Shown: one piece after another, positions 6,719 through 56,400 of the stretch
Numbering within the stretch: position 1 is the stretch's first letter
Layout of the letters: the number at the start of each line of letters is the position of its first letter
Source: Octopus sinensis
Lineage: Eukaryota
Assembly (NCBI RefSeq): GCF_006345805.1
Contig: NC_043010.1
Location: 56,482,001 to 56,546,000, forward strand
Direction of reading: 5' to 3'
DNA length: 64,000 bases
Notes under the pieces: model-generated
Told to the model about the DNA's origin: nothing
Database searches by the model: none
What the model saw: the letters and a program-made list of their open reading frames with translations, nothing else
Made by a program: the position numbers and the translations under genes

Positions 6719-7296
6719 CATATTATATACTAAAACAAGCTTATAGGCTGTGTAATAATGCTTTTAATGAATATGATATATCGTAATATTTATATATCAG
6801 TGCTGGTATGGCTGTATGGTAAGACGTTTGCTTCTCAACCAAATGGTTCTGTGTTCAGTCTCACTGGATGGCACCTTGAGCAAGTGCCTTCTACTAAAGC
6901 CTCAGGCCAACCAAATCCTTGTGAGTGGATTTGATAGACAAAAACTCAAAGACGCCCATCATATATTTATATATATCATTGTTTAACATCGACCTTCCAT
7001 GCAAGGGTAAGACAGTTGACAGGAGCCAGCCAGGTGGAAAATTATCCTAGGCTACTGTGTCTGTTTTGGCAAGGATTTTACAGCTGGATGCCCTTCCTGT
7101 CACCAACCACTCTGCAGAGTGGATTCAATACTTTTTACATAACACTAGCAGAGGCAAGGTTAGGTTTGGCATGATTGTTACATATATATTGTGTGTGTGT
7201 GTGTGTGTGTGTGCGTGCGCGTGTGTGTGTGTGTGCATGCGTGTGTGTGCATGCGTGCGTGTGTCTGTGTGTCTGCATTTGCCCCTGCAACAACCA
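6719..7296. repeat. Donor locus of the 2041-2761 rearrangement (SINE mosaic)
   Basis: Direct and inverted identity to 2041-2761 as detailed in that feature. Confidence 0.85.
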
Positions 7297-9532: not shown

Positions 9533-9838
9533 TGGACGTATCATAAATAAACGAACCCAACTCGTCTAAGCCGAGCAACTATCTGATCAACTTCAACGAA
9601 GCACATGGGTGGGTTTACATATATTACATCCGGTAAATGGCAGACTTTTACGAATTGCATTTCGGGAAAGGAAAAGTTTTTTCGGAATAAAAAACTTTTC
9701 CTTTCCCGAAATGCAATTCGTAAAAGTCTGCCATTTACCGGATGTAATATATGTAAACCCACCCATGTGCTTCGTTGAAGTTGATCAGATAGTTGCTCGG
9801 CTTAGACGAGTTGGGTTCGTTTATTTATGATACGTCCA

Positions 9839-16752: not shown

Positions 16753-17259
16753 CACACACACACACACACACACACACTTACATTCATATATACTTATATC
16801 TGCCAGTATAGGAGATGAGGCTAAACAATAACAACGATGATATATATATACATACATACACAAACACATACATACACGCACAAACATATACGTGTCACGG
16901 GTTTTCAAGTAAAACTGTGTTTGTGTTTCACAACACCAACAACAACAAAAGCTCCACCCCCACCATGACCACCACCACCCAGGGTGGCCAACCTAATATT
17001 AATGTGAGATCTAGAATAATATTACTTTTTTCTTAACTGACAAAGTTGAGGGGGAGTGGGGATGATGTAACCTCCACTCACTATTTGCCCACACACCCTC
17101 ACTCTGAGTAGAGGTTGATAGAGTATAACCTCCACTCCGTATGTACCCCTCCACCTTCACTCTCAGTTAAGGCCAGTGTTTATGTAACCTCCACCCTGTT
17201 AATACCCAGCCACCCCTACACTACTACATGGAGAGGTCGGGTGTATGTATACCCATCCA

Positions 17260-17293
<34 letters not shown>

Positions 17294-17774
17294 ACATTCA
17301 TATATACTTATATCTGCCAGTATAGGAGATGAGGCTAAACAATAACAACGATGATATATATATACATACATACACAAACACATACATACACGCACAAACA
17401 TATACGTGTCACGGGTTTTCAAGTAAAACTGTGTTTGTGTTTCACAACACCAACAACAACAAAAGCTCCACCCCCACCATGACCACCACCACCCAGGGTG
17501 GCCAACCTAATATTAATGTGAGATCTAGAATAATATTACTTTTTTCTTAACTGACAAAGTTGAGGGGGAGTGGGGATGATGTAACCTCCACTCACTATTT
17601 GCCCACACACCCTCACTCTGAGTAGAGGTTGATAGAGTATAACCTCCACTCCGTATGTACCCCTCCACCTTCACTCTCAGTTAAGGCCAGTGTTTATGTA
17701 ACCTCCACCCTGTTAATACCCAGCCACCCCTACACTACTACATGGAGAGGTCGGGTGTATGTATACCCATCCAC

Positions 17775-22405: not shown

Positions 22406-22684
22406 GTCCTCCCTTTATTAACCAGACTGCTGTCTCTCATAAACGTCTCATTGCCTACATTGGAAAGAACTTTAGAATCCGCTGCCCCATCACTGCCATA
22501 CCTCCACCCTACATGCAGTGGAGTAAAGATGGACACACTATCAACATTGCATGGGAGAGGTTTCGAATCCAGGAGATGGGACTCCGCATTAAAGATGTTG
22601 AAATTGAAGACAGTGGATTGTACACATGTAAAGCAACCAACGGTTTTGGCAGTGTTCAGCTCAACTTCACCCTTACAGTTATAC
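22406..22684 (+). CDS. FGFRL1: FGFRL1 exon: Ig domain 1
   Basis: Acceptor ttgcag (ag 22404-05), donor gtgagt at 22685, 279 bp, phase 1-1. Encodes GPPF...RIRCP...QWSKDG...EDSGLYTCKATNGFGS...LTVI, closely resembling vertebrate FGFRL1 Ig1. Confidence 0.93.
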
Positions 22685-31107: not shown

Positions 31108-31173
31108 CTGAGAAGAAAGAAAGTAGCCAACAGAACAATCTCTACCCTCACCAACTGGACCCTACAGGAGCAA
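31108..31173 (+). CDS. FGFRL1: FGFRL1 exon: Ig1-Ig2 linker
   Basis: Acceptor tttgcag, donor gtaagt at 31174, 66 bp, phase 1-1, open frame (P)EKKESSQQNNLYPHQLDPTGA. Phases join the flanking exons. Not present in the ORF track because it is short. Confidence 0.75.
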
Positions 31174-32200
31174 GTAAGTTATTTAGGAGCTGTCATGTCT
31201 TCTCTCTATTCTTCAGAGATTTTCTAGTTTCATTCACTCCCTTTAAAATGACATTCCAGCTATGACCATCCTATCTTACAGTGAAGACTTCTTTATCCCA
31301 AGGAAAATGTGAAGGACATTTAGCTGAAGTTTCTATCATGTCAGATAACATTGTAAAGGTTGTATCCCCCCTCCCCTCTAAATAACATTGATCCAAACCA
31401 CTACGCTACAGCCTATACCATTCTAATAACCATCAACATTGGCAATGGACTCCACACTCGCCTTAACAAAATAATGACCACCACCTCCAACTACCTGTCA
31501 GGTTGCTAAGACTAAGTAATATAGAGGAACAACACTCCAGAATTTACTATTGGAATACAACAGGGATTCATTCTCTCTCCCATTTTTAAACCTGTCTTCA
31601 CAACCTCACACATTACACTGCTTTGGAAAAAATTTGGTTCCACAAAGACAGATTGAAAGTAACACCTACCGAATCTATTGTCTACAACAACAACAGCAGA
31701 CATCAAATACAAGCAACTACATAACAGTCAACAACATAAACACACACACAGAAGAGTCATATTATATATCATCATCATCATCATTATCATTTAATGTCCA
31801 TTTTCCATGCTGGCATGGCTTGGACGGATTGTCAGGAGCTGGCAAGCCAGGGGACTACAACAAGTTCCAGTTGTCAGTTTTATGGCTGGATGCTCTTCCT
31901 GACACCAACCTGGGCATCCAGCCCTACAAACCATGCCAAACCAGACAACTGGAGCTTGGTGTGGCCCTCCTGGAGCAATCCCTGAGCATCAGAAAGAAAC
32001 AACAAAAATGTCAACAATACATTAAGACCCCCCCCCTCACCCGCCATTCATGGATTCAGCTAATCCTTCTTTATGGTGTGGGGTGCATAGGGAGCAGTTC
32101 TACTCAAGATCTTCACAATCTTTCTTCCCCCCCCCTCACCCAGTAGCATTAATACAATTAGTTGTACGTGTATAGATGTGTGTTGAGCTGAACAGTGGCC

Positions 32201-32714
32201 TTAAAGTAAAGGGTCCTTTCTTTGTTTTGAAGCTGTCTGTCTGTCCCCTTAAAGTAAAGGGTCCTTTCTTTGTTTTGAAGCTGTCTGTCTGTCCCCTTAA
32301 AGTAAAGGGTCCTTTCTTTGTTTTGAAGCTGTCTGTCTGTCCCCTTAAAATAAAGGGTCCTTTCTTTGTTTTGAAGCTGTCTGTCTGTCCCCTTAAAGTA
32401 AAGGGTCCTTTCTTTGTTTTGAAGCTGTCTGTCTGTCCCCTTAAAGTAAAGGGTCCTTTCTTTGTTTTGAAGCTGTCTGTCTGTCCCCTTAAAGTAAAGG
32501 GTCCTTTCTTTGTTTTGAAGCTGTCTGTCTGTCCCCTTAAAATAAAGGGTCCTTTCTTTGTTTTGAAGCTGTCTGTCTGTCCCCTTAAAGTAAAGGGTCC
32601 TTTCTTTGTTTTGACGCTGTCTGTCTGTCCCCTTAAAGTAAAGGGTCCTTTCTTTGTTTTGAAGCTGTCTGTCTGTCCCCTTAAAATAAAGGGTCCTTTC
32701 TTTGTTTTGAAGCT
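32201..32714. repeat. 48-bp minisatellite, 10 full units plus 1 partial, overlapping the Ig2 splice acceptor
   Basis: Unit ttaaagtaaagggtcctttctttgttttgaagctgtctgtctgtcccc starts at 32201+48n. Units 4, 8 and 11 carry aaaata; unit 9 carries gacg. Confidence 0.97.
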
Positions 32715-33003
32715 GAGCCCCGTTTCCTGCACCTGAGTAAGATGAAAAAAAAGTCAATCCCGCGCCCGGTTGGAAGTTCCATAAGGTTCCGATGTCGAGC
32801 AAGTGGTAACCCACGGCCGGAGATACAATGGCTGAAGGATGGTCAGATGTGGACATCTGATAACATGGGCAACTATCAGGACAGTAGACTCCGTTGGACG
32901 TTAAAGATTGATGATTTACGACAAGAGGACAGTGGCCAGTACACTTGTGTGGTCACTAACATCCATGGTACCATCAATTATACATATTCTCTGGAAGTTG
33001 TCG
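32713..33003 (+). CDS. FGFRL1: FGFRL1 exon: Ig domain 2
   Basis: Acceptor ttttgaag (ag 32711-12), donor gtaagt at 33004, 291 bp, phase 1-1. Encodes EPRFLHLSKMKKKSIPRPVGSSIRFRCRASGNPRPEIQWLKDG...DSGQYTCVVTNIHGTINYTYSLEVV, with the basic patch typical of FGFRL1 Ig2. Confidence 0.93.
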
Positions 33004-33291
33004 GTAAGTGACAACATCTTTCTTCAAATGCACCTTTTTTTTCTCTGTGTGTCATTACATCTGTCATTACATCTGTTTAACTCTTTGTCTCCAGTCTTAG
33101 ACATCTTTTCTCCTTTATTACATCTTTATCTGTCCCCCATCACTATCAACATCAACAACATTATAACCATCACTATCATCATCATCATTACCTCCACCAT
33201 CATCATCAACATCACCAACATCATCATTACTGAAACTCGTATTAAAACTATTATTATTTCCTCTCTTCACAATCCTATTTGTGTTTTTCAG

Positions 33292-33410
33292 AAAAAGTTC
33301 AAAGAAAGCCGCAGCTGCTGCCGCCACACCCCCTCAACCAAACGGCTCAAAGGGGGGAGCAGGCGTCATTCCAGTGTCATGTCAAAAGTGAAGTCCAACC
33401 TCACATAAAA
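33292..33410 (+). CDS. FGFRL1: FGFRL1 exon: first half of Ig domain 3
   Basis: Acceptor ttttcag, donor gtaaga at 33411, 119 bp, phase 1-0. Encodes KVQRKPQLLPPHPLNQTAQRGEQASFQCHVKSEVQPHIK. Confidence 0.92.
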
Positions 33411-35965: not shown

Positions 35966-36203
35966 TGGCTGAAATGGGTCGATGACCCCTCCACCCTTTC
36001 CAATGTCAACCACACCATTGAAGTGAAAGGCCGGAAATTTGTTGTACTAAAATCTGGTGAAAACTGGAAACGACCGGATGGTTCTTACGTGAATAAATTG
36101 ACACTAAAAAGGATCACATCAGAAGATTCAGGATTATACATATGTTTAGGGGCCACAAGTCTCGGGATCAGCAGCCGACAGGCTTTCCTGAAAGTGCATC
36201 CAG
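35966..36203 (+). CDS. FGFRL1: FGFRL1 exon: second half of Ig domain 3
   Basis: Acceptor ttccag, donor gtattc at 36204, 238 bp, phase 0-1. Encodes WLKWVDD...IEVKGRKFVVLKSGENWKRPDGSYVNKL...DSGLYICLGATSLG..RQAFLKVHP. The KFVVL...W.RPDGSY.NKL stretch is diagnostic of FGFRL1. Confidence 0.95.
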
Positions 36204-37590: not shown

Positions 37591-37925
37591 ATCCAAAGCT
37601 TTATCGACCAAACCAAAAAATTCCTCCGTCCACCTCCGGAATCCCTCTCCTCGCCATCTGTATTCCTGTTGTTATGCTTGCCATTATTATTGGAGCTGTA
37701 TTCCTTGGTATCCGATGCCATGGTTGCTGTTCACAGACTTCACACAGCTCCAACCACCAACATGTCCAGCACCTTCCTGTACCGACTAGCCACCATGAGT
37801 ACCCAGTCAACTACCCACAGATGTCCGCCTACCACACCCCAAACATCCATGCTGGCTCCAGCAGTATGTCCGGCAGCTCCAGCTGCCGCGTCGCATCGTC
37901 CTCCATTCCTCCACTCCGTCACTAA
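37591..37925 (+). CDS. FGFRL1: FGFRL1 last coding exon: juxtamembrane, TM helix, 70-aa cytoplasmic tail, stop
   Basis: Acceptor cttcacag, phase 1. Encodes (D)PKLYRP...IPLLAICIPVVMLAIIIGAVFLGI-RCHGCC...PPLRH, with TAA at 37923-25. No kinase domain follows. Confidence 0.9.
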
Positions 37926-38289: not shown

Positions 38290-39405
<1,116 letters not shown>

Positions 39406-46621: not shown

Positions 46622-48559
46622 GTACATATATATATATGTACATATATATTTATATGTGTGTGTGTATATATGTATGTATGTATATATATATGGATGTATA
46701 TATATATATTTACATATATATGTGTGTATATATATATATATAAATGTATATAATGTGTGTGTGTTTGTGTATATATACGTGTGTGTGCATGTACATATAT
46801 ACACACACACATGTATATGTAATACATAAAATAAGTCCGTGTTTACACCTTTATTTATCAATTTTGAAACTGTTTTTCCTTTATATTATTTTAACTAAAG
46901 GTTTTTAAATGAAACTTTTGTGTTTGTTTTTATTGATATAACTTGTTTTTGTTGTTGTTGTTTAGCCTTGGGTTACCTTGGTTACCCTGCTGTGCACAAT
47001 GTCACAGCTGCACCGTTCCACAATTTTACATGTAAACTTCACCTCACACCTAATCAGTGAGGTGGTAGTGGGCAAGACAGGCATGGAGGTGGATGTGGTG
47101 ATGTTAATTTAGAATGTGATTGTGTATATCACTTGAGTAATAATTCAAATTTCTTTCTTAATTACATCGCATGTGTCTGTGTGTCTCTTTACTTCTCTCT
47201 GTGTTTGTTTTGTTCTCTCCTCCCACCCCTCTTGTAGAAATAAATTATTTAAAAGGAAATAAATGTTCAGTCTGTCTGTAAGTCACCACCTCCCTGCTCC
47301 ATTTCTGTCTCTGAATACTTCTTCTTCCAGTCCCTCCTTCTAAACATTTCCAGCCTTGTTTAATCACATTCGCTTTCACCAATGATTCACTCTTCACTTC
47401 CTTAACCAATCAAATCATTCAGCTTCTCATTAGCAGCTAATTACATATCAATTGCTAAATTAATCAACTCACCCCCTTCCTACTCTCAAACTCCAGATGA
47501 AAACATTCTCACAAATTAACAAATAGCTAATTACATTAATTTGCTTTAATTACTTCAATTGTTTTGTTAACTAATCAAATCACACGACCAGTATGGATGC
47601 CTGCATCTTGCCTCCAACAAACATCTCAAACCAATCGGCAACAACCAACCATTCCAAATCCGTCCAAGGCCGAAACTTGATGTAGAAAAAAAAACCTCTC
47701 CAAACACGTCCAGATTTCACTTTTGTCTGACGAAAAGAAAGAAGAAACTGTGACTTGTTACTTTGTTGTGACAACACTACAGTTGTGTGGAATTGTTGTA
47801 TGGGGGTTGTTTATCTTGTCATGGTGAGTTCAGGTCCCCTTGAGCGTCTGAAGAAATTGTTTCAGCATCTGTCCAGATCATCCTCAGTTGTCTGAGCTTT
47901 ACAGTTCTGATAAAAAGCTCTGTGTAATGGCTGAGATGTTTCATCGACAAAAACCCATTCTACATTAAACTCAGATGTCAACCTCAAAGGAAACAGTTTC
48001 ATTTAAGATGTGTCTTACCTCATTTATTACTCCTTTTTCAGTGGGTGGGGAAGTGTTTCACTCATGACCTTCACAGGGCCTCTGAGGTTGATGAAGGAGA
48101 AGGAAGAGAAACCAAAACGTCTTCGATGCCATCTACTTTATGGGTTTCCCTGCAGTTTCCATTTATTTACTTATTAGCGAGGGAAGCAGCATTAGTTCAA
48201 ATCAGCAATTTGCATACCATACTTAATGCATAATAATTTAGAAAGCCACAAAACAGTGGAAGAAAAGTCTTGAGCAGCAGCGAGGGAATTGCTAAATCTA
48301 TATTTCTGCTTCCTTCAGCGCCATCTGTAGTAAATATCCACAAGCAACTGCATGTTTAGACAATAAAGACAGAAATTGTGCAATCTGAACTGTTCTTTGT
48401 GCAAGTTAAGCACTTGAAACGTTTACTATACGAATGCTGATGCAAGGGAAGTAACAATTAAAGACGCCTTGACATGAGTTGTCTCCTCTTATGTATTCCC
48501 TACACGAAACATTTCAAGTCGTTCGCCTCACTTGCCGTAGTCTTATCGACAATGGAGTC

Positions 48560-50279: not shown

Positions 50280-51010
50280 ACGTCTCTTTTTCATAGGTCA
50301 ACCTTATCTTCATAAATCTGAATTAAGACGACAATATTTGGTTATGGTTCCGTTAAATACAATATTCCAAACTGAATAGAAGGCGTAGATAATTATTCAA
50401 GGGAGATCACTCTAAAAACCTTTTCTGTAGTTAACTCCCTTGTGATTTTATTTCTCCTATTTAATCAATAATTAGTATTTTAAATAAATATCCCTGTGAA
50501 ATTAGATTATTAAACTTTAAGATGAGGAGTAATTTTTTTTTAATACCAGGAATTGTTGATTAACAGAACAGTTGATAAACCGTGAAAAGTATTGTTTGAG
50601 TGCCTGGGTTAAGTTGCGAATGTTAACATTTTGGCTTGAAATCCCGCCCAGACAGACTGACATTTTTTTGCTAAAATTTAAGAGCCGTGGCCCGGTGGCC
50701 GTAGCCCGATGCTAAAGTTAGGAGGGAACTTTTTCGTTATCTCACCCCCATTAAAAAATTGGGTTATCTCTCCCCGTTTTATGAGAAATATCGGTACTTT
50801 TGGTTATATACCTCAACTGAAAAAAAATGTGCTACGGATAGAAAACACTTTGATTAACGGAACTGTTAAACCCTGTTTACTCCGCTCACGCTATTATAAA
50901 CCTATGGCTAATCCACTGGTAATCCGTAGTGACTCGGCGATGTCAAGTACTACCAAAATCAACAGCCTCGTGGCAGACTTAGAGACTCACATGCATACAT
51001 AAGTACATAC

Positions 51011-52851
51011 GTAAGTGAAATACTGAATGAGCAATTCAAGAGTGTTTTCACTCCACCCCTTGGGCATCTCCAAATCACCAATCCAACTGACTTCTTTACC
51101 ACTGCAGATATAAAATCAGAGGCGGCGACGATAGATTACATCGATATAAAGGAAGACGATGTAACCAAGGCTATAGATGAAATGAAAACAGACTCAGCTA
51201 CTGGCCCCGATGGATTCCTGGCAATCCTCCTAAAAGCATGTAAGAGAGTCCTAGCAAGACCACTGCAGTTCCTCTTTCAGAGCTTCCTTGCAGCTGGCAA
51301 ACTTCCAGGAAAACTGAAGGAAGGTAAAATATGCCCCATTCATAAAGGAGGTAGCAGAGCGGAAGCCAAGAACTATAGACCTATCTCTCTGACCTCACAC
51401 ATCAGCAAGGTCACGGAACGAATAGTCAGAAGGAAGCTGATCACCTTCCTTGAAGAGAATGACTTGCTGCCCGACACCCAACATGGTTTCCGACCAGGGA
51501 GAAGCTGTTTAACTCAGCTCCTACAACACTATGACTGGGTGCTGAAACGGCTACTCAACCACTCAAATGTGGAAGTGATATATCTCGACTTTGCAAAGGC
51601 CTTTGATAAAGTCGATCATGGAATGATATGTCACAAACTGCGTGATCTCAACATAGTTGGAAAACTGGGAGAATGGCTTCATGACTTTCTGAAGGATAGA
51701 AGTCAGGTGGTAGTAGCCAATGGGGCCACCTCCATTAACACACAAATAGTGAGCGGTGTTCCGCAGGGCACTGTTCTGGGACCACTACTGTTCATAATGG
51801 CCCTCTCAGACATGCCCTCAGCCACGCAGAGAGCCACGATCACAAGTTATGCAGATGATACAAAAGTTTCACAGGCAATACAGAACCCTGAGGACACTAA
51901 ACACCTGCAATGTGAGCTGGACGAAATATACAAGTGGGCTGAAAAGAATAGCATGCAGTTCAATGCTGGAAAGTTTCAAGCTTTATACTATCAGCATGCA
52001 AAACTGAATGCAATACCCAATGAATACACTGGACCCGGAGGGATTGCAATCCCAGAGGCACAATCAGTGCGTGACCTGGGTATTCACATGAGTGATGACG
52101 CGACCTTTCATGTACATGTTGCTAAACTGACAATGAAATGTAGACGGCTGGCTGGATGGATTCTTAGAACCTTTAGAACAAGAGAACAAGAAACCATGAT
52201 GGTCCTCTGGAAGACACTTGTCCTAAGCCACTTTGACTATTGCTCTCAGCTATGGTCACCATCCAGTGTCAAGTTGATCACAGAACTTGAGGCGATCCAA
52301 CGAAGCTACACGAAGAAGATAGCCTCTATGCAGAATGTAAGCTACTGGGAAAGACTCAAGAGATTAAAATTATATTCCCTGGAGCGTAGGCGGGAAAGAT
52401 ATGCCATAATATACATCTGGAAGATCCTGGAGGGAAGTGTCCTGAACTTTGGCATCGAGAGTTACGCAAATGCTAGAACTGGGCGCCACTGCGTGGTGCC
52501 TAGGACTCCAAACCTGCCATCAAGATGTAGGACAAGATTCTGTGATAGCCTGGGCTTCCGAGGCCCACAGCTCTTCAATATCCTCCCGAAGAACCTGAGA
52601 GACCTGCATGGGGTGGATACAGTTGTCTTTAAAATGAAGCTGGATCTCTTCCTGTCAGGTGTCCCAGATGAACCAACTTCACGGCAGGAGGGGCAGATGA
52701 GGGCAGCTGCATCGAACTCTCTCATGCACCAAATGGCAGTTGCTAGAAAGCCTCCATGAAGTGAAACCAAGTAGCAACACCAAATGGCGGTGCCCCAGCA
52801 TGGCCACAGCTCATAAGCTGAAACTAGAATCAATCAATCAATCAATCAATC
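51011..52851 (+). mobile_element. Young 5'-truncated CR1-clade LINE with an intact RT ORF
   Basis: 525-aa ORF 51182-52759 with YRPISL, DFAKAFD, GVPQGTVLGP and YADD motifs. (CAAT)n tail at about 52829-52851. Putative 8-bp TSD gtacatac at 51003-51010 and 52852-52859. One frameshift near 51063. Confidence 0.93.
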
Positions 52852-53814: not shown

Positions 53815-56400
53815 GACCATGTCAACACTTCTACTTGGAGTTGTTTACCGCCCGCCAAATTATCGTCAAGACACACAACTTTTTGATATCCTCAGAGCTG
53901 CTGCCATGTAAACAGCCACTTATGTTTATATTGCAGGGGACTTCAATTTCCCTGAGATTGACTGGGAGGCCTTCCGTTGGCCGCAAAGTGCAGACGATTT
54001 CCTTGAACTGGTGCTGAATTCAAATTGGTCCCAAGTCGTTACCTCCCCCACAAGGGGTAACAACACTTTGGATCTGCTACTTACCGCTTCTCCTGAAACA
54101 ATTATCAGTGTCACTACTGAAGAACTTTTAGGTGACTCTGATCATTCCATGATCATGGTCGACTTGTCTCTGACTGGTTGTAACAAAAACCACAACCCTC
54201 TTCAGACTGCCCGCTTTGACTGGAATAAAGCAGACTGGAGCTCTTATTGTACTGAGCTGCAACGCCCAAACTGTCTCGAATTTTATGCCTCTGGAGATGT
54301 GGACACTATACTCCAGAACATTCTGAATTCAATTTGGGCGCCATGTGCAGCATCAGTACCACGCAAGCACAAAAAAACACACAATAGTGCAATTTGGGAG
54401 ACTGCAGCAGTCCGACTTGCCAGGAAAGGAATACACATTGCACAATTCAGAGATCAACAGGAAAAAGCGCAATAGATCAGCCAACCACCTCAAGCAGGTG
54501 ACAAAAAAGGCAGTGCTTGAATTCGAACAGCGCATAGCAACCAACCCTGACAGCAAAGTGTTCTGGAAGTATGTACACTCAAAGCAGAGACCTCACTCTC
54601 CAGTTGGTTCCCTTCGCAATCCCCACACAGGACAGATTACTGGCAATCCCAAAGAATGTGCAGAAATCATTGCTGGATGCTATGCAGGCATCTTTACTGT
54701 CGAAGATCGAAATATTCCATCTCCATCACCTCTGACACCGGACTCTATAACTACTATGAAACTTACACCAGCAATGCTACAACCTTAAGAATAAACGTAA
54801 CTATGCCTCTCCTGGTCTCGATGGTGTTGCAAAACTACTTCTCAAACGCAGTGGGTACTTTCTTCTAAACCAACTTTCACTATTCTTTCAATTCTGTCTT
54901 GACAATGGTGTTACTCCAGAGCAGTGGAAAACTGCAAGTGTTATCCCTCTGTTCAAAAAAGGTGACCGCACATCGCCTGTCAACTATCGCCCCGTTAGTC
55001 TTACTAGCTGCCTCGCCAAACTGAGGGAAACCCTCTGGAACTTCTGGAAGTCTCACAGCCTCATCCAGCCGTCACAATTTGGTTTTATTCCAAACTCCAG
55101 CTACTGTAATCAACTCATCGAGTTTCTTGAGGACATTACCCAAATCACTGATCGCAGATCCTGGGTGGATGTTGTTTACCTGGACTTTGTTAAGGCTTTT
55201 AATTCTGTGCCACACAAAAGACTTATGGTGAAACTTTCTGCAATGGGTGTAAGAGACGAACTCTATAACTGGTTAAAGTCCTTTATTATCGGCCGAAAAG
55301 AGGTTGTCGCAGTTCTAGGACAGCACTCTTCACCCTATGAGATGACATCTGGTGTACCACAGGGATCTGTTCTTGGCTCCCTTTTATTTGTTGCATATGT
55401 TAATGACATAGATGTCAACTTAAAGAATGCCACAGTGCTGAAATATGCAGATGACATCAAGCTGTACCTCGAAATAAAGAGGTCAGATCCTGTACACTAT
55501 AGATCTCTATTGCAAGCAGACATGGACACAATGCAGCAGTGGATCATGGACTGGCAACTCAAGCTGGCTGTGGACAAATGTACCACCATGCATTTTGGGA
55601 GGAGAAACCCAGCGTCCACCTACTCCCTCCACAACACTAGTCTCAAAAAGTCTTCATGTGAACGTGACCTGGGCGTTATTGTCGACTGCGATTTGCGTTG
55701 GACAAAACACATCACTAAAATTGCCAAGAAGGCTGAGGGTATCTTAGCACCACTCACCAAGACCTTTGGGAGCAGCTCTCCGGCTATCTATATGCGGCTT
55801 TATATAGTTATGGTACGGCCTCACCTGGAATTTGCATCACCGGTCTGGAACCCCTATCTTGTTCAGGATATTAATCGTCTGGAAGCCGTTCAGCGACGTG
55901 CAACCAAGAGAATACCCTCCATCAGGCATTTGCCATATTCTGAACGCCTTACTTCCATGGGCATGGACACATTGAAACTCCGACGTCTGGCAGCTGACTT
56001 GGCAGACACCCATAAAATTATCAACCATCTTACAAACAATAACTCTGAGCACCTTTTCAAACTCCACCCGTCTAACACCCATGGACATGTTTACAAAGTC
56101 AGAAAACGGCACAGCTCCCATGACTTTCGGAAACATTTTTTCACGCTAAGAGTTGCTGAAGCATGGAACAAACTGCTGGCATCAGTTGTTAGTTGTCGGA
56201 GCACTGCATCCTTCAAAACGTCCATGCTTCCCGAGATTCGCCAACACTACACCTGATTTTCTCCCCTCCATACACACGCAAGCATGTATCTGACTCATAC
56301 ACAGTTCACTTTCCAGACATTTGTACATTACTGCATGTGCTTTATGTGCACTTTTGACAAGTTGTGGTGCACCTGAGCACATTATTTAACTCTAAATGAA
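53815..56400 (+). mobile_element. CR1-clade LINE ORF2 (APE plus RT) with stops and frameshifts
   Basis: APE motifs GVVYRPP, AGDFNFP, TLDLLLT and GDSDH at 53835-54150. RT ORF 55165-56256 has DFVKAF, GVPQGSVLG and YADD. Confidence 0.92.

What the first reader, a model, noticed from the sequence alone, without database searches (positions are those of the whole stretch)
32201..32714. Minisatellite has multiplied the FGFRL1 Ig2 splice acceptor 11 times, each upstream copy followed by a stop
Seen: every 48-bp unit contains the pyrimidine tract and AG (ctttctttgttttgaag|ct) that serve as the phase-correct acceptor of the Ig2 exon in unit 11. Use of any upstream AG reads ct-gtc-tgt-ctg-tcc-cct-TAA, an in-frame stop. 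Most units also contain a donor-like aa|gtaaag, defining potential 21-nt stop-containing micro-exons. That GT is lost in units 4, 8 and 11, the last being the one adjoining the true exon, and the AG is lost in unit 9. Inference: a copy-number-variable array of decoy or poison acceptors. It could set the ratio of full-length receptor to NMD-targeted or secreted Ig1-only product, acting as a heritable splicing rheostat.
Basis: partly seen in the sequence, partly recalled or inferred. Interest (0 to 1): 0.75.

Follow-up and report, generated by a model that had tools for sequence, protein, structure and literature searches.

The report
Splice-acceptor minisatellite in octopus FGFRL1
In the Octopus sinensis FGFRL1 gene, a young 48-base tandem repeat has copied the splice acceptor of the Ig2 exon eleven times. 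This is a known kind of repeat (a "mirage") that has so far been found harmless to splicing, and nothing here shows that it regulates the gene.

Summary
Window 32199-32716 holds ten 48-bp units plus a 38-bp partial unit. Each unit equals positions -45 to +3 of the intron/Ig2-exon junction of Octopus sinensis FGFRL1. My exon model matches XP_029645257.1 at 100%. Ten of the eleven copies keep the AG. Any upstream AG gives an in-frame TAA after six codons.

The array is a local, lineage-specific duplication:
- One copy in an FGFRL1 paralogue, in an unidentified octopod and in Argonauta.
- Three copies in O. bimaculoides, where both upstream copies have lost the AG.
- Eleven copies in O. sinensis.

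The A variant is ancestral, so the donor-like GT was gained, not lost. That GT lacks both -1G and +5G, so it is weak.

The annotated mRNA uses the last AG. No octopus transcript data could be reached.

Tandem repeats that span exon/intron boundaries are already described. Amphioxus "mirages" do not disturb splicing. The human F7 intron-7 VNTR has identical pseudo-donors that stay silent.

The "splicing rheostat" reading is therefore untested. It is not favoured by the lack of conservation, by the repeated loss of the AG, or by precedent.

One lead remains: both O. vulgaris ortholog models skip the linker and Ig2 exons.

The parts
32199..32716 (+). 48-bp minisatellite: 10 full units plus a 38-bp partial unit. 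Each unit equals -45..+3 of the intron/Ig2-exon junction.
   Evidence: TRF; pattern search; unit table and 47/48 identity to the single-copy paralogue junction. Copies 192 bp apart are 100% identical over 240 nt, which fits a four-unit higher-order duplication.
32711..32712 (+). Authentic acceptor AG of the Ig2 exon, in unit 11 (an A-variant unit).
   Evidence: The exon model is 100% identical to XP_029645257.1. The exon start CTGA(G/A)CCCC is conserved in O. bimaculoides, the paralogue, an unidentified octopod and Argonauta.
32231..32664 (+). Span holding the nine intact upstream pseudo-acceptor AGs. The G of each AG lies at 32232+48n, n=0..7 and 9. Each is followed in frame by TAA; the first TAA is at 32250-32252.
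   Evidence: Frame derived from the verified exon phases.
32615..32616 (+). Unit 9: AG changed to CG, so this pseudo-acceptor is disarmed.
32206..32207 (+). Donor-like GT (AAA|GTAAAG), first of eight, in units 1-3, 5-7, 9 and 10 at 32206+48n. This is a derived A-to-G change; units 4, 8 and 11 keep the ancestral A at 32350, 32542 and 32686.
   Evidence: Ancestral state from O. bimaculoides, the paralogue and the unidentified octopod.
31108..31173 (+). Linker ('acid-box' position) exon, 66 nt. Its donor (GT at 31174) is the one that must choose among the eleven acceptors.
32713..33003 (+). Ig2 exon, 291 nt, phase 1/1.
22406..22684 (+). Ig1 exon (context).
33292..33410 (+). Ig3 first-half exon (context).
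35966..36203 (+). Ig3 second-half exon (context).
37591..37925 (+). Last coding exon: transmembrane helix, a tail of about 80 aa with many histidines and no kinase domain, stop codon at 37923-37925.

Best explanation
This is a 'mirage'-type minisatellite: a tandem duplication of the 48 bases that straddle the intron/Ig2-exon junction of FGFRL1. The unit runs from -45 to +3 and holds the likely branch-point A-run, the pyrimidine tract, the AG and the first three exon bases.

History. The duplication arose by slippage or unequal exchange in the common ancestor of O. sinensis and O. bimaculoides. It then grew to eleven acceptor copies in O. sinensis, at least partly through a 192-bp (four-unit) step.

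Behaviour (inferred, not shown). The upstream copies have the same intrinsic strength as the real site. Productive splicing nevertheless uses the copy next to the exon body, which gives the shortest exon (291 nt) for exon definition. This mirrors the F7 intron-7 VNTR, where only the donor next to the exon is used. Any leak to an upstream AG gives a stop 21 nt into the exon, with three exon junctions downstream, so nonsense-mediated decay should remove it.

Overall, the array is a neutral to mildly harmful by-product of repeat instability, not a selected regulator.
For: Shown:
1. The unit equals the contiguous ancestral junction. A-variant units match the single-copy paralogue junction at 47 of 48 positions.
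2. Copy number by lineage: one in the paralogue of O. sinensis and O. vulgaris; one in four Logan samples of an unidentified octopod; one in Argonauta hians; three in O. bimaculoides with the same left flank; eleven in the window.
3. RefSeq XP_029645257.1 uses 32713. The protein is 98% identical between the two Octopus species, so the productive isoform is under constraint.
4. Both upstream copies in O. bimaculoides read AAC, and unit 9 in O. sinensis reads ACG. Two of the four substitutions seen among units hit the AG (binomial P about 0.01, post hoc). A selected decoy function would not predict this.
5. The decoy donor AAA|GTAAAG lacks both -1G and +5G. All five real donors of the gene have at least one.

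From the literature:
- The F7 intron-7 pseudo-sites are functional but silent (PMC1557585).
Against: - No transcript evidence for O. sinensis could be reached. Three protein searches found no octopus RNA-derived contigs.
- The enrichment of AG-destroying changes suggests that selection does see the decoys, so some use is likely.
- Classical experiments with duplicated splice sites disagreed on which copy wins (discussion in PMC1557585).
- Both flanking introns are short (1539 and 288 nt), so intron definition could favour the first AG.
- Both O. vulgaris ortholog models omit the linker and Ig2 exons, which could mean the exon is poorly recognised.
- The real site is AAG, a weaker acceptor than the CAG of the gene's other five exons.
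Confidence: 0.6

Rival explanations
1. Leaky decoys with no adaptive value. A sizeable, constitutive share of transcripts is spliced at upstream AGs and destroyed by nonsense-mediated decay. The array then simply lowers FGFRL1 output in O. sinensis.
For: - The pseudo-sites match the real acceptor from -29 to +3, apart from the -27 A/G variant and unit 9, and each unit carries its own A-run and pyrimidine tract.
- The upstream intron is only about 1.5 kb.
- Independent AG-destroying changes in O. bimaculoides and in unit 9 fit selection against a real cost.
Against: - Nine intact decoys persist and have spread in O. sinensis.
- Published mirages and the F7 VNTR are silent (PMC3087553, PMC3902484, PMC1557585).
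- In ABCA7, use of the second repeat-borne donor was only about 2% and did not depend on length (PMC5954066).
- No transcript data here.
Confidence: 0.2
2. The array is a selected, copy-number-variable set of poison acceptors or micro-exons. It sets the ratio of full-length receptor to decay-targeted or secreted Ig1-only product.
For: Anatomy only: in-frame TAA after every decoy AG, and copy number that differs between species.
Against: - Not conserved: one copy in the paralogue and outgroups, and the AG is lost in all upstream O. bimaculoides copies.
- Units are 98-100% identical, so the array is young.
- The micro-exon donor is weak and recently derived.
- No regulated isoform is annotated.
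- Within-species polymorphism is unknown.
Confidence: 0.07
3. The array weakens recognition of the Ig2 exon as a whole and so promotes exon skipping (Ig1 or linker joined to Ig3) rather than decoy use. The ABCA7 VNTR raises skipping of the neighbouring exon in a comparable way.
For: - Both O. vulgaris ortholog models (CAI9733590.1 and CAI9733589.1) read ...TLTVI|QKVQRK..., so they lack the linker and Ig2 exons.
- That annotation used Iso-Seq, RNA-seq and PASA (PMC10700109).
- All the exons involved are phase 1/1, so skipping stays in frame.
- ABCA7 exon-19 skipping rises with VNTR length (PMC5954066).
Against: - The O. vulgaris ortholog DNA could not be retrieved. It is unknown whether it carries the array, or whether an assembly or annotation problem explains the models.
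- The skip also removes the linker exon, which the array does not obviously explain.
- The O. sinensis and O. bimaculoides RefSeq models include Ig2.
Confidence: 0.1
4. The copy number is an assembly artefact: the array is real, but eleven copies is wrong.
For: - Tandem repeats are error-prone in assemblies.
- One amphioxus mirage was mis-assembled in its genome draft (PMC3087553).
- O. bimaculoides may itself be collapsed if its assembly is short-read based (my recollection, not checked here).
Against: - The O. sinensis assembly is PacBio plus Hi-C (Li et al. 2020, cited in PMC11202624), and 518 bp is well within read length.
- The units carry an ordered variant pattern, GGGA GGGA G'GA.
- An orthologous array exists in an independently assembled species.
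Confidence: 0.05

Closest known systems
[quoted passage not shown] Sources: PMC3087553, PMC3902484; the original Canestro et al. 2002 paper was not held.
   Same: - Tandem units span an exon/intron junction and so multiply the AG or GT signal.
- BflGb6 duplicates the 3' end of an intron plus the start of the exon, which is the acceptor side, as here.
- Unit lengths are 10-160 bp.
- Copy number differs between haplotypes.
- Units inside the cluster are homogenised.
- Normal splicing is reported.
   Different: - Described only in cephalochordates; this one is in a cephalopod mollusc.
- Only 3 exon bases are included here, so the array is almost wholly intronic.
- The copies here are near-perfect.
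- Eleven copies with a dated comparative series (1, 3, 11).
- Splicing has not been examined here.
Human F7 intron-7 37-bp VNTR (PMC1557585)
   Same: - One end unit of a polymorphic minisatellite spans the exon/intron junction.
- Five to nine splice sites of identical sequence compete for one partner.
- Only the site next to the exon is used.
- The pseudo-sites work if the authentic one is destroyed.
   Different: - Donor side, not acceptor side.
- Vertebrate gene.
- Tested with 50 constructs, whereas nothing has been tested here.
Human ABCA7 intron-18 25-bp VNTR (PMC5954066)
   Same: - A repeat that starts at a splice site.
- Use of the next repeat-borne site retains one unit and gives a premature stop.
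- Repeat length correlates with skipping of the adjacent exon and with lower expression.
   Different: - Donor side.
- Arrays of hundreds of bases to kilobases.
- The length effect is on exon skipping, not on use of the repeated site.
Poison exons and regulated unproductive splicing coupled to nonsense-mediated decay (general knowledge)
   Same: An alternative splice choice would insert an in-frame stop upstream of further exon junctions.
   Different: - Known poison cassettes are usually conserved and regulated.
- This element is young and lineage-specific.
- Its micro-exon donor is weak.
- No use is documented.
NAGNAG and other tandem acceptors (general knowledge)
   Same: Several AGs compete at one exon start.
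   Different: - Spacing is 48 nt, not 3.
- Each copy has its own branch region and pyrimidine tract.
- The products are truncated, not changed by one residue.

Membership tests
Minisatellite / VNTR | Head-to-tail repeats with a unit of about 10-100 bp | tested here: met
   Period 48, 10.8 copies, 98% matches.
Minisatellite / VNTR | Copy number varies among individuals | not testable with these tools
   Only one O. sinensis assembly was reachable. Copy number does vary between species: 1, 3 and 11.
'Mirage' (boundary-spanning tandem duplication) | The repeat unit contains an authentic exon/intron junction, and one end unit is the junction in use | tested here: met
   Unit = -45..+3 of the Ig2 junction. 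Unit 11 is the annotated acceptor.
'Mirage' (boundary-spanning tandem duplication) | Generated locally from the gene's own sequence, not by insertion of a foreign repeat | tested here: met
   47/48 identity to the single-copy junction of the paralogue. The flanks are shared with O. bimaculoides. No other copy occurs in the 64-kb window.
'Mirage' (boundary-spanning tandem duplication) | Regular splicing is kept despite the duplicated signals | not testable with these tools
   Only indirect evidence: the RefSeq model uses the last AG, and the protein is conserved.
F7-type array of pseudo splice sites | [quoted passage not shown] | tested here: met
   Identical from -26 to +3 in units 1-8 and 10. 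Units 4 and 8 are identical to unit 11 from -45 to +3.
F7-type array of pseudo splice sites | Pseudo-sites silent in vivo but usable when the authentic site is inactivated | not testable with these tools
   Needs RNA data or minigenes.
Poison exon / regulated unproductive splicing | The alternative event introduces a premature stop upstream of an exon junction | tested here: met
   In silico only: A|CT GTC TGT CTG TCC CCT TAA, with three junctions downstream.
Poison exon / regulated unproductive splicing | The element is conserved across related species | tested here: not met
   One copy in the paralogue, the unidentified octopod and Argonauta. The upstream AGs are destroyed in O. bimaculoides.
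Poison exon / regulated unproductive splicing | The event is seen in transcripts and is regulated | not testable with these tools
   No octopus transcript contigs were found.
FGFRL1 (the host gene) | Three Ig domains, a transmembrane helix and a short tail without a kinase domain | tested here: met
   - Pfam finds three Ig stretches and no kinase.
- Transmembrane segment plus a tail of about 80 aa with many histidines, then a stop.
- 100% identity to XP_029645257.1, and the closest matches are FGFRL1 proteins of many animal groups.
- The best solved structures are FGFR ectodomains.

The most novel reading that the evidence does not exclude
In O. sinensis and O. vulgaris the eleven-copy array is not silent. 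A share of FGFRL1 pre-mRNA that depends on copy number is lost, either to upstream AGs (stop, then decay) or to skipping of the Ig2 exon, as in the O. vulgaris models. Array length would then be a heritable modifier of FGFRL1 dosage or isoform ratio. That would be the first documented case on the acceptor side, and the first in a mollusc.
Probability: 0.12. Interest if true: 0.6.

Novelty: new member of a known kind. Interest (0 to 1): 0.3.

Why it matters
The locus offers a natural experiment on how a spliceosome chooses among identical, fully equipped 3' splice sites. It is the acceptor-side mirror of the F7 donor array. A ready comparative series exists within octopods: 1 copy, 3 copies with two disarmed, and 11 copies with one disarmed.

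It also extends 'mirage' repeats from amphioxus to a cephalopod. It warns annotators that such arrays can mislead gene models.

If the array proved leaky or length-dependent, it would be a simple heritable modifier of an FGF decoy receptor. Nothing here shows that.

Tried and rejected
1. RNA structure masking the decoys. The array folds better than shuffles (z = -4.8). However, the ancestral A-variant unit, which includes the real site, forms the stronger hairpin (-9.2 against -6.4 kcal/mol). Predicted pairing of the pyrimidine tracts is similar in all units, 0.65-0.79. There is no support for selective masking.

2. Transcript evidence from the protein collection. Three searches returned no RNA-derived octopus FGFRL1 fragments. 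Retrieval is clearly incomplete, because one search missed P0003 and one search missed P0001. Absence therefore means little.

3. O. vulgaris ortholog DNA. P0006 is not on record, the gene range of P0011 is too long, and the 89-aa genomic ORF is not on record.

4. Species of the Logan samples SRR11869384/85/90/91. The literature search gave only an unrelated paper.

5. A foreign or dispersed repeat as the origin. Rejected: the unit is the gene's own junction and occurs nowhere else in the window.

6. The bacterial promoter and terminator scan is irrelevant to a eukaryotic intron. Its hits only echo the repeat.

7. The original 'mirage' paper (PMC117041) is not held.

Full report
**What is there**

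Tandem Repeats Finder gives a single strong array at 32199-32715: period 48, 10.8 copies, 98% matches, no indels, score 1006. The 48-mer is found ten times with at most one mismatch, only here in the window, against zero in 100 shuffles.

Laid out in register, there are ten full units and a 38-bp partial unit that runs into the exon.
- Units 1-8, 10 and 11 carry TCCTTTCTTTGTTTTGAAG|CTG.
- Unit 9 reads GACG.
- Units 4, 8 and 11 read TTAAAATAAAG. The others read TTAAAGTAAAG.
- Copies 192 bp apart are 100% identical over 240 nt. The variant order is GGGA GGGA G'GA. The array therefore grew at least once by a four-unit step.

**The host gene**

I identified six exons on the + strand from open frames, splice signals and conservation against a more distant cephalopod contig:

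| Exon | Coordinates |
|---|---|
| Ig1 | 22406-22684 |
| Linker | 31108-31173 |
| Ig2 | 32713-33003 |
| Ig3a | 33292-33410 |
| Ig3b | 35966-36203 |
| Transmembrane + tail | 37591-37925 |

- Joined, they give a 441-aa open frame. It is 100% identical over its full length to XP_029645257.1, 'fibroblast growth factor receptor-like 1 [Octopus sinensis]'.
- The window is an exact piece of chromosome CM016872.1 of GCA_006345805.1. That assembly is PacBio plus Hi-C (Li et al. 2020, as cited in PMC11202624).
- Pfam sees three Ig stretches and no kinase. The best solved structures are FGFR ectodomains.
- The signal-peptide exon lies about 27 kb upstream of the window.

The linker exon ends with one spare base, A. 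Ig2 begins with CT GAG CCC. Joining 31173 to an upstream AG reads A|CT GTC TGT CTG TCC CCT TAA. The interval from a decoy AG to the next GT is 21 nt.

**Origin**

The 48-bp unit is the gene's own junction, positions -45 to +3.
- A paralogous FGFRL1 copy has a single junction...tatgtctgtcccc TTAAAATAAAGGGTCCTTTCTTTGTTTTGAAG|ctgagcccc. It was read in O. sinensis (L005) and O. vulgaris (L006). It matches the A-variant units at 47 of 48 positions.
- An unidentified octopod has a single copy in four Logan samples. Its Ig2 exon is 94% identical in DNA to the window's, and its introns about 70-74%.
- Argonauta hians has a single, different acceptor...cttgtattgcag|ctgaacccc.
- The O. bimaculoides ortholog shares the window's left flank (gaacagtggcc|ttaaa) and has a 47-bp x 2.8 array.

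The duplication therefore arose in the common ancestor of O. sinensis and O. bimaculoides and expanded afterwards. From memory, that O. bimaculoides assembly is built on short reads, so three copies may be an underestimate. I did not check this.

1. Every single-copy relative and every O. bimaculoides unit has A at the variable position. The GT of AAA|GTAAAG is therefore a gain that spread in O. sinensis, not a loss in units 4, 8 and 11. This GT has neither -1G nor +5G. All five real donors of the gene have one or both. A 21-nt exon bounded by such a donor is an unlikely substrate. This last step is inference from general splicing knowledge.

2. Both upstream units of O. bimaculoides read GAAC|CTG, so they have no AG. 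Unit 9 of O. sinensis reads GACG. Two of the four substitutions that distinguish units hit the two AG positions out of 48 (binomial P about 0.01; post hoc and small numbers). This pattern fits mild selection against decoy AGs, not selection for them.

**How it most likely works**

Shown:
- Nine upstream sites are identical to the real acceptor from -26 to +3.
- Each has its own A-run 22-29 nt upstream and its own pyrimidine tract.
- The annotated mRNA uses the last one.
- The protein is 98% identical between the two Octopus species.

Inferred:
- The copy next to the exon wins because it alone is backed by the exon body and the 33004 donor, giving a 291-nt exon. Upstream AGs would give exons of 339 to 771 nt.
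- Any leak would be removed by nonsense-mediated decay.

The published parallels point the same way.
- In the human F7 gene, a 37-bp VNTR spans the exon-7 donor. Five to nine identical donors are present and all are functional, yet only the one next to the exon is used (PMC1557585).
- Amphioxus 'mirages' are minisatellite-like duplications of intron/exon boundaries, including the acceptor side in globin BflGb6. [quoted passage not shown] A second paper says they 'do not generate aberrant mRNAs' (PMC3902484).
- In ABCA7, the next repeat-borne donor is used in about 2% of transcripts whatever the repeat length, while skipping of the neighbouring exon rises with length (PMC5954066).

**What keeps the question open**

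- I could reach no octopus RNA data.
- The flanking introns are short (1539 and 288 nt).
- The real site is AAG, whereas the other five acceptors of the gene are CAG.
- The early duplicated-site experiments disagreed (PMC1557585 discussion).
- Both O. vulgaris ortholog models, CAI9733590.1 and CAI9733589.1, join Ig1 directly to Ig3a (TLTVI|QKVQRK) and so omit the linker and Ig2 exons. That annotation combined Iso-Seq, RNA-seq, protein alignments and PASA (PMC10700109). The skip may be real, but I could not fetch the DNA to see whether the array or an assembly problem lies behind it.

**Structure idea tested and dropped**

The array RNA is predicted to fold better than shuffles (z = -4.8), because the A-run pairs with the U-tract. 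However, the A-variant unit, which includes the real site, makes the stronger hairpin. Pairing probabilities are alike across units.

**Verdict**

- The element is a real, young, lineage-specific boundary minisatellite. It is a new member, in a cephalopod, of the 'mirage' kind and the acceptor-side counterpart of the F7 VNTR.
- The rheostat interpretation is untested and disfavoured. I put a silent or nearly silent by-product at about 0.6, non-adaptive leak at 0.2, exon-skipping effects at 0.1, and an adaptive rheostat at under 0.1.
- Interest is modest (0.3). Its value is as a natural test of 3' splice-site choice, and junction counts from public RNA data would settle it.

Noticed in passing
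window 22684 -> 33292 (junction implied by O. vulgaris proteins P0006 and P0011): Both O. vulgaris ortholog models (CAI9733590.1 and CAI9733589.1) join Ig1 directly to Ig3a, skipping the linker and Ig2 exons. The O. sinensis and O. bimaculoides RefSeq models include these exons.
   Followed up: partly
window 46962-47057 (+): An alternative last coding exon (...ALGYLGYPAVHNVTAAPFHNFTCKLHLTPNQ) used by O. vulgaris model CAI9733589.1 maps here at 100% identity. It would cut the protein inside the transmembrane segment.
   Followed up: partly
L005 (O. sinensis VCDQ01003452.1) and L006 (O. vulgaris OX597833.1): There are FGFRL1 paralogues about 87% identical in protein (XP_036355932.1, XP_036366879.1, CAI9737501.1). 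They keep a single-copy Ig2 acceptor. One O. vulgaris model (P0010) looks like a fusion of several partial tandem copies.
   Followed up: partly
window 33050-33076; L004 46690-46740: A 12-bp repeat, TGTCATTACATC, lies just downstream of the Ig2 donor. It also varies in copy number: 2.2 in O. sinensis, 4.2 in O. bimaculoides, and visibly more in the unidentified octopod L001.
   Followed up: no
window 32711-32712 compared with the other acceptors: The Ig2 acceptor is AAG in Octopus and in the unidentified octopod. The gene's five other acceptors are CAG. Argonauta has CAG and the decapodiform contig has TAG at this exon.
   Followed up: partly
window 50933-52756, 53912-54472, 54760-56253 (+): Pieces of non-LTR retrotransposons lie downstream of the gene: two reverse-transcriptase ORFs and one endonuclease ORF.
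   Followed up: yes
window 38463-39405: A 943-bp (AT)n tract starts about 540 bp after the FGFRL1 stop codon, probably in or near the 3' UTR.
   Followed up: no
window 16812-17033 and 17326-17547; 2055-2703 versus 6734-7171; about 9544-9827: Three repeat structures lie in the large first intron. They are probably transposon remnants.
- A 514-bp tandem duplication with identical translations.
- A pair of inverted copies about 4 kb apart.
- A near-perfect palindrome.
   Followed up: no
protein search tool: Retrieval is incomplete. The Ig2-only query missed the full-length O. sinensis protein that contains it, and the full-length query missed P0001. Negative results from these searches carry little weight.
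   Followed up: no
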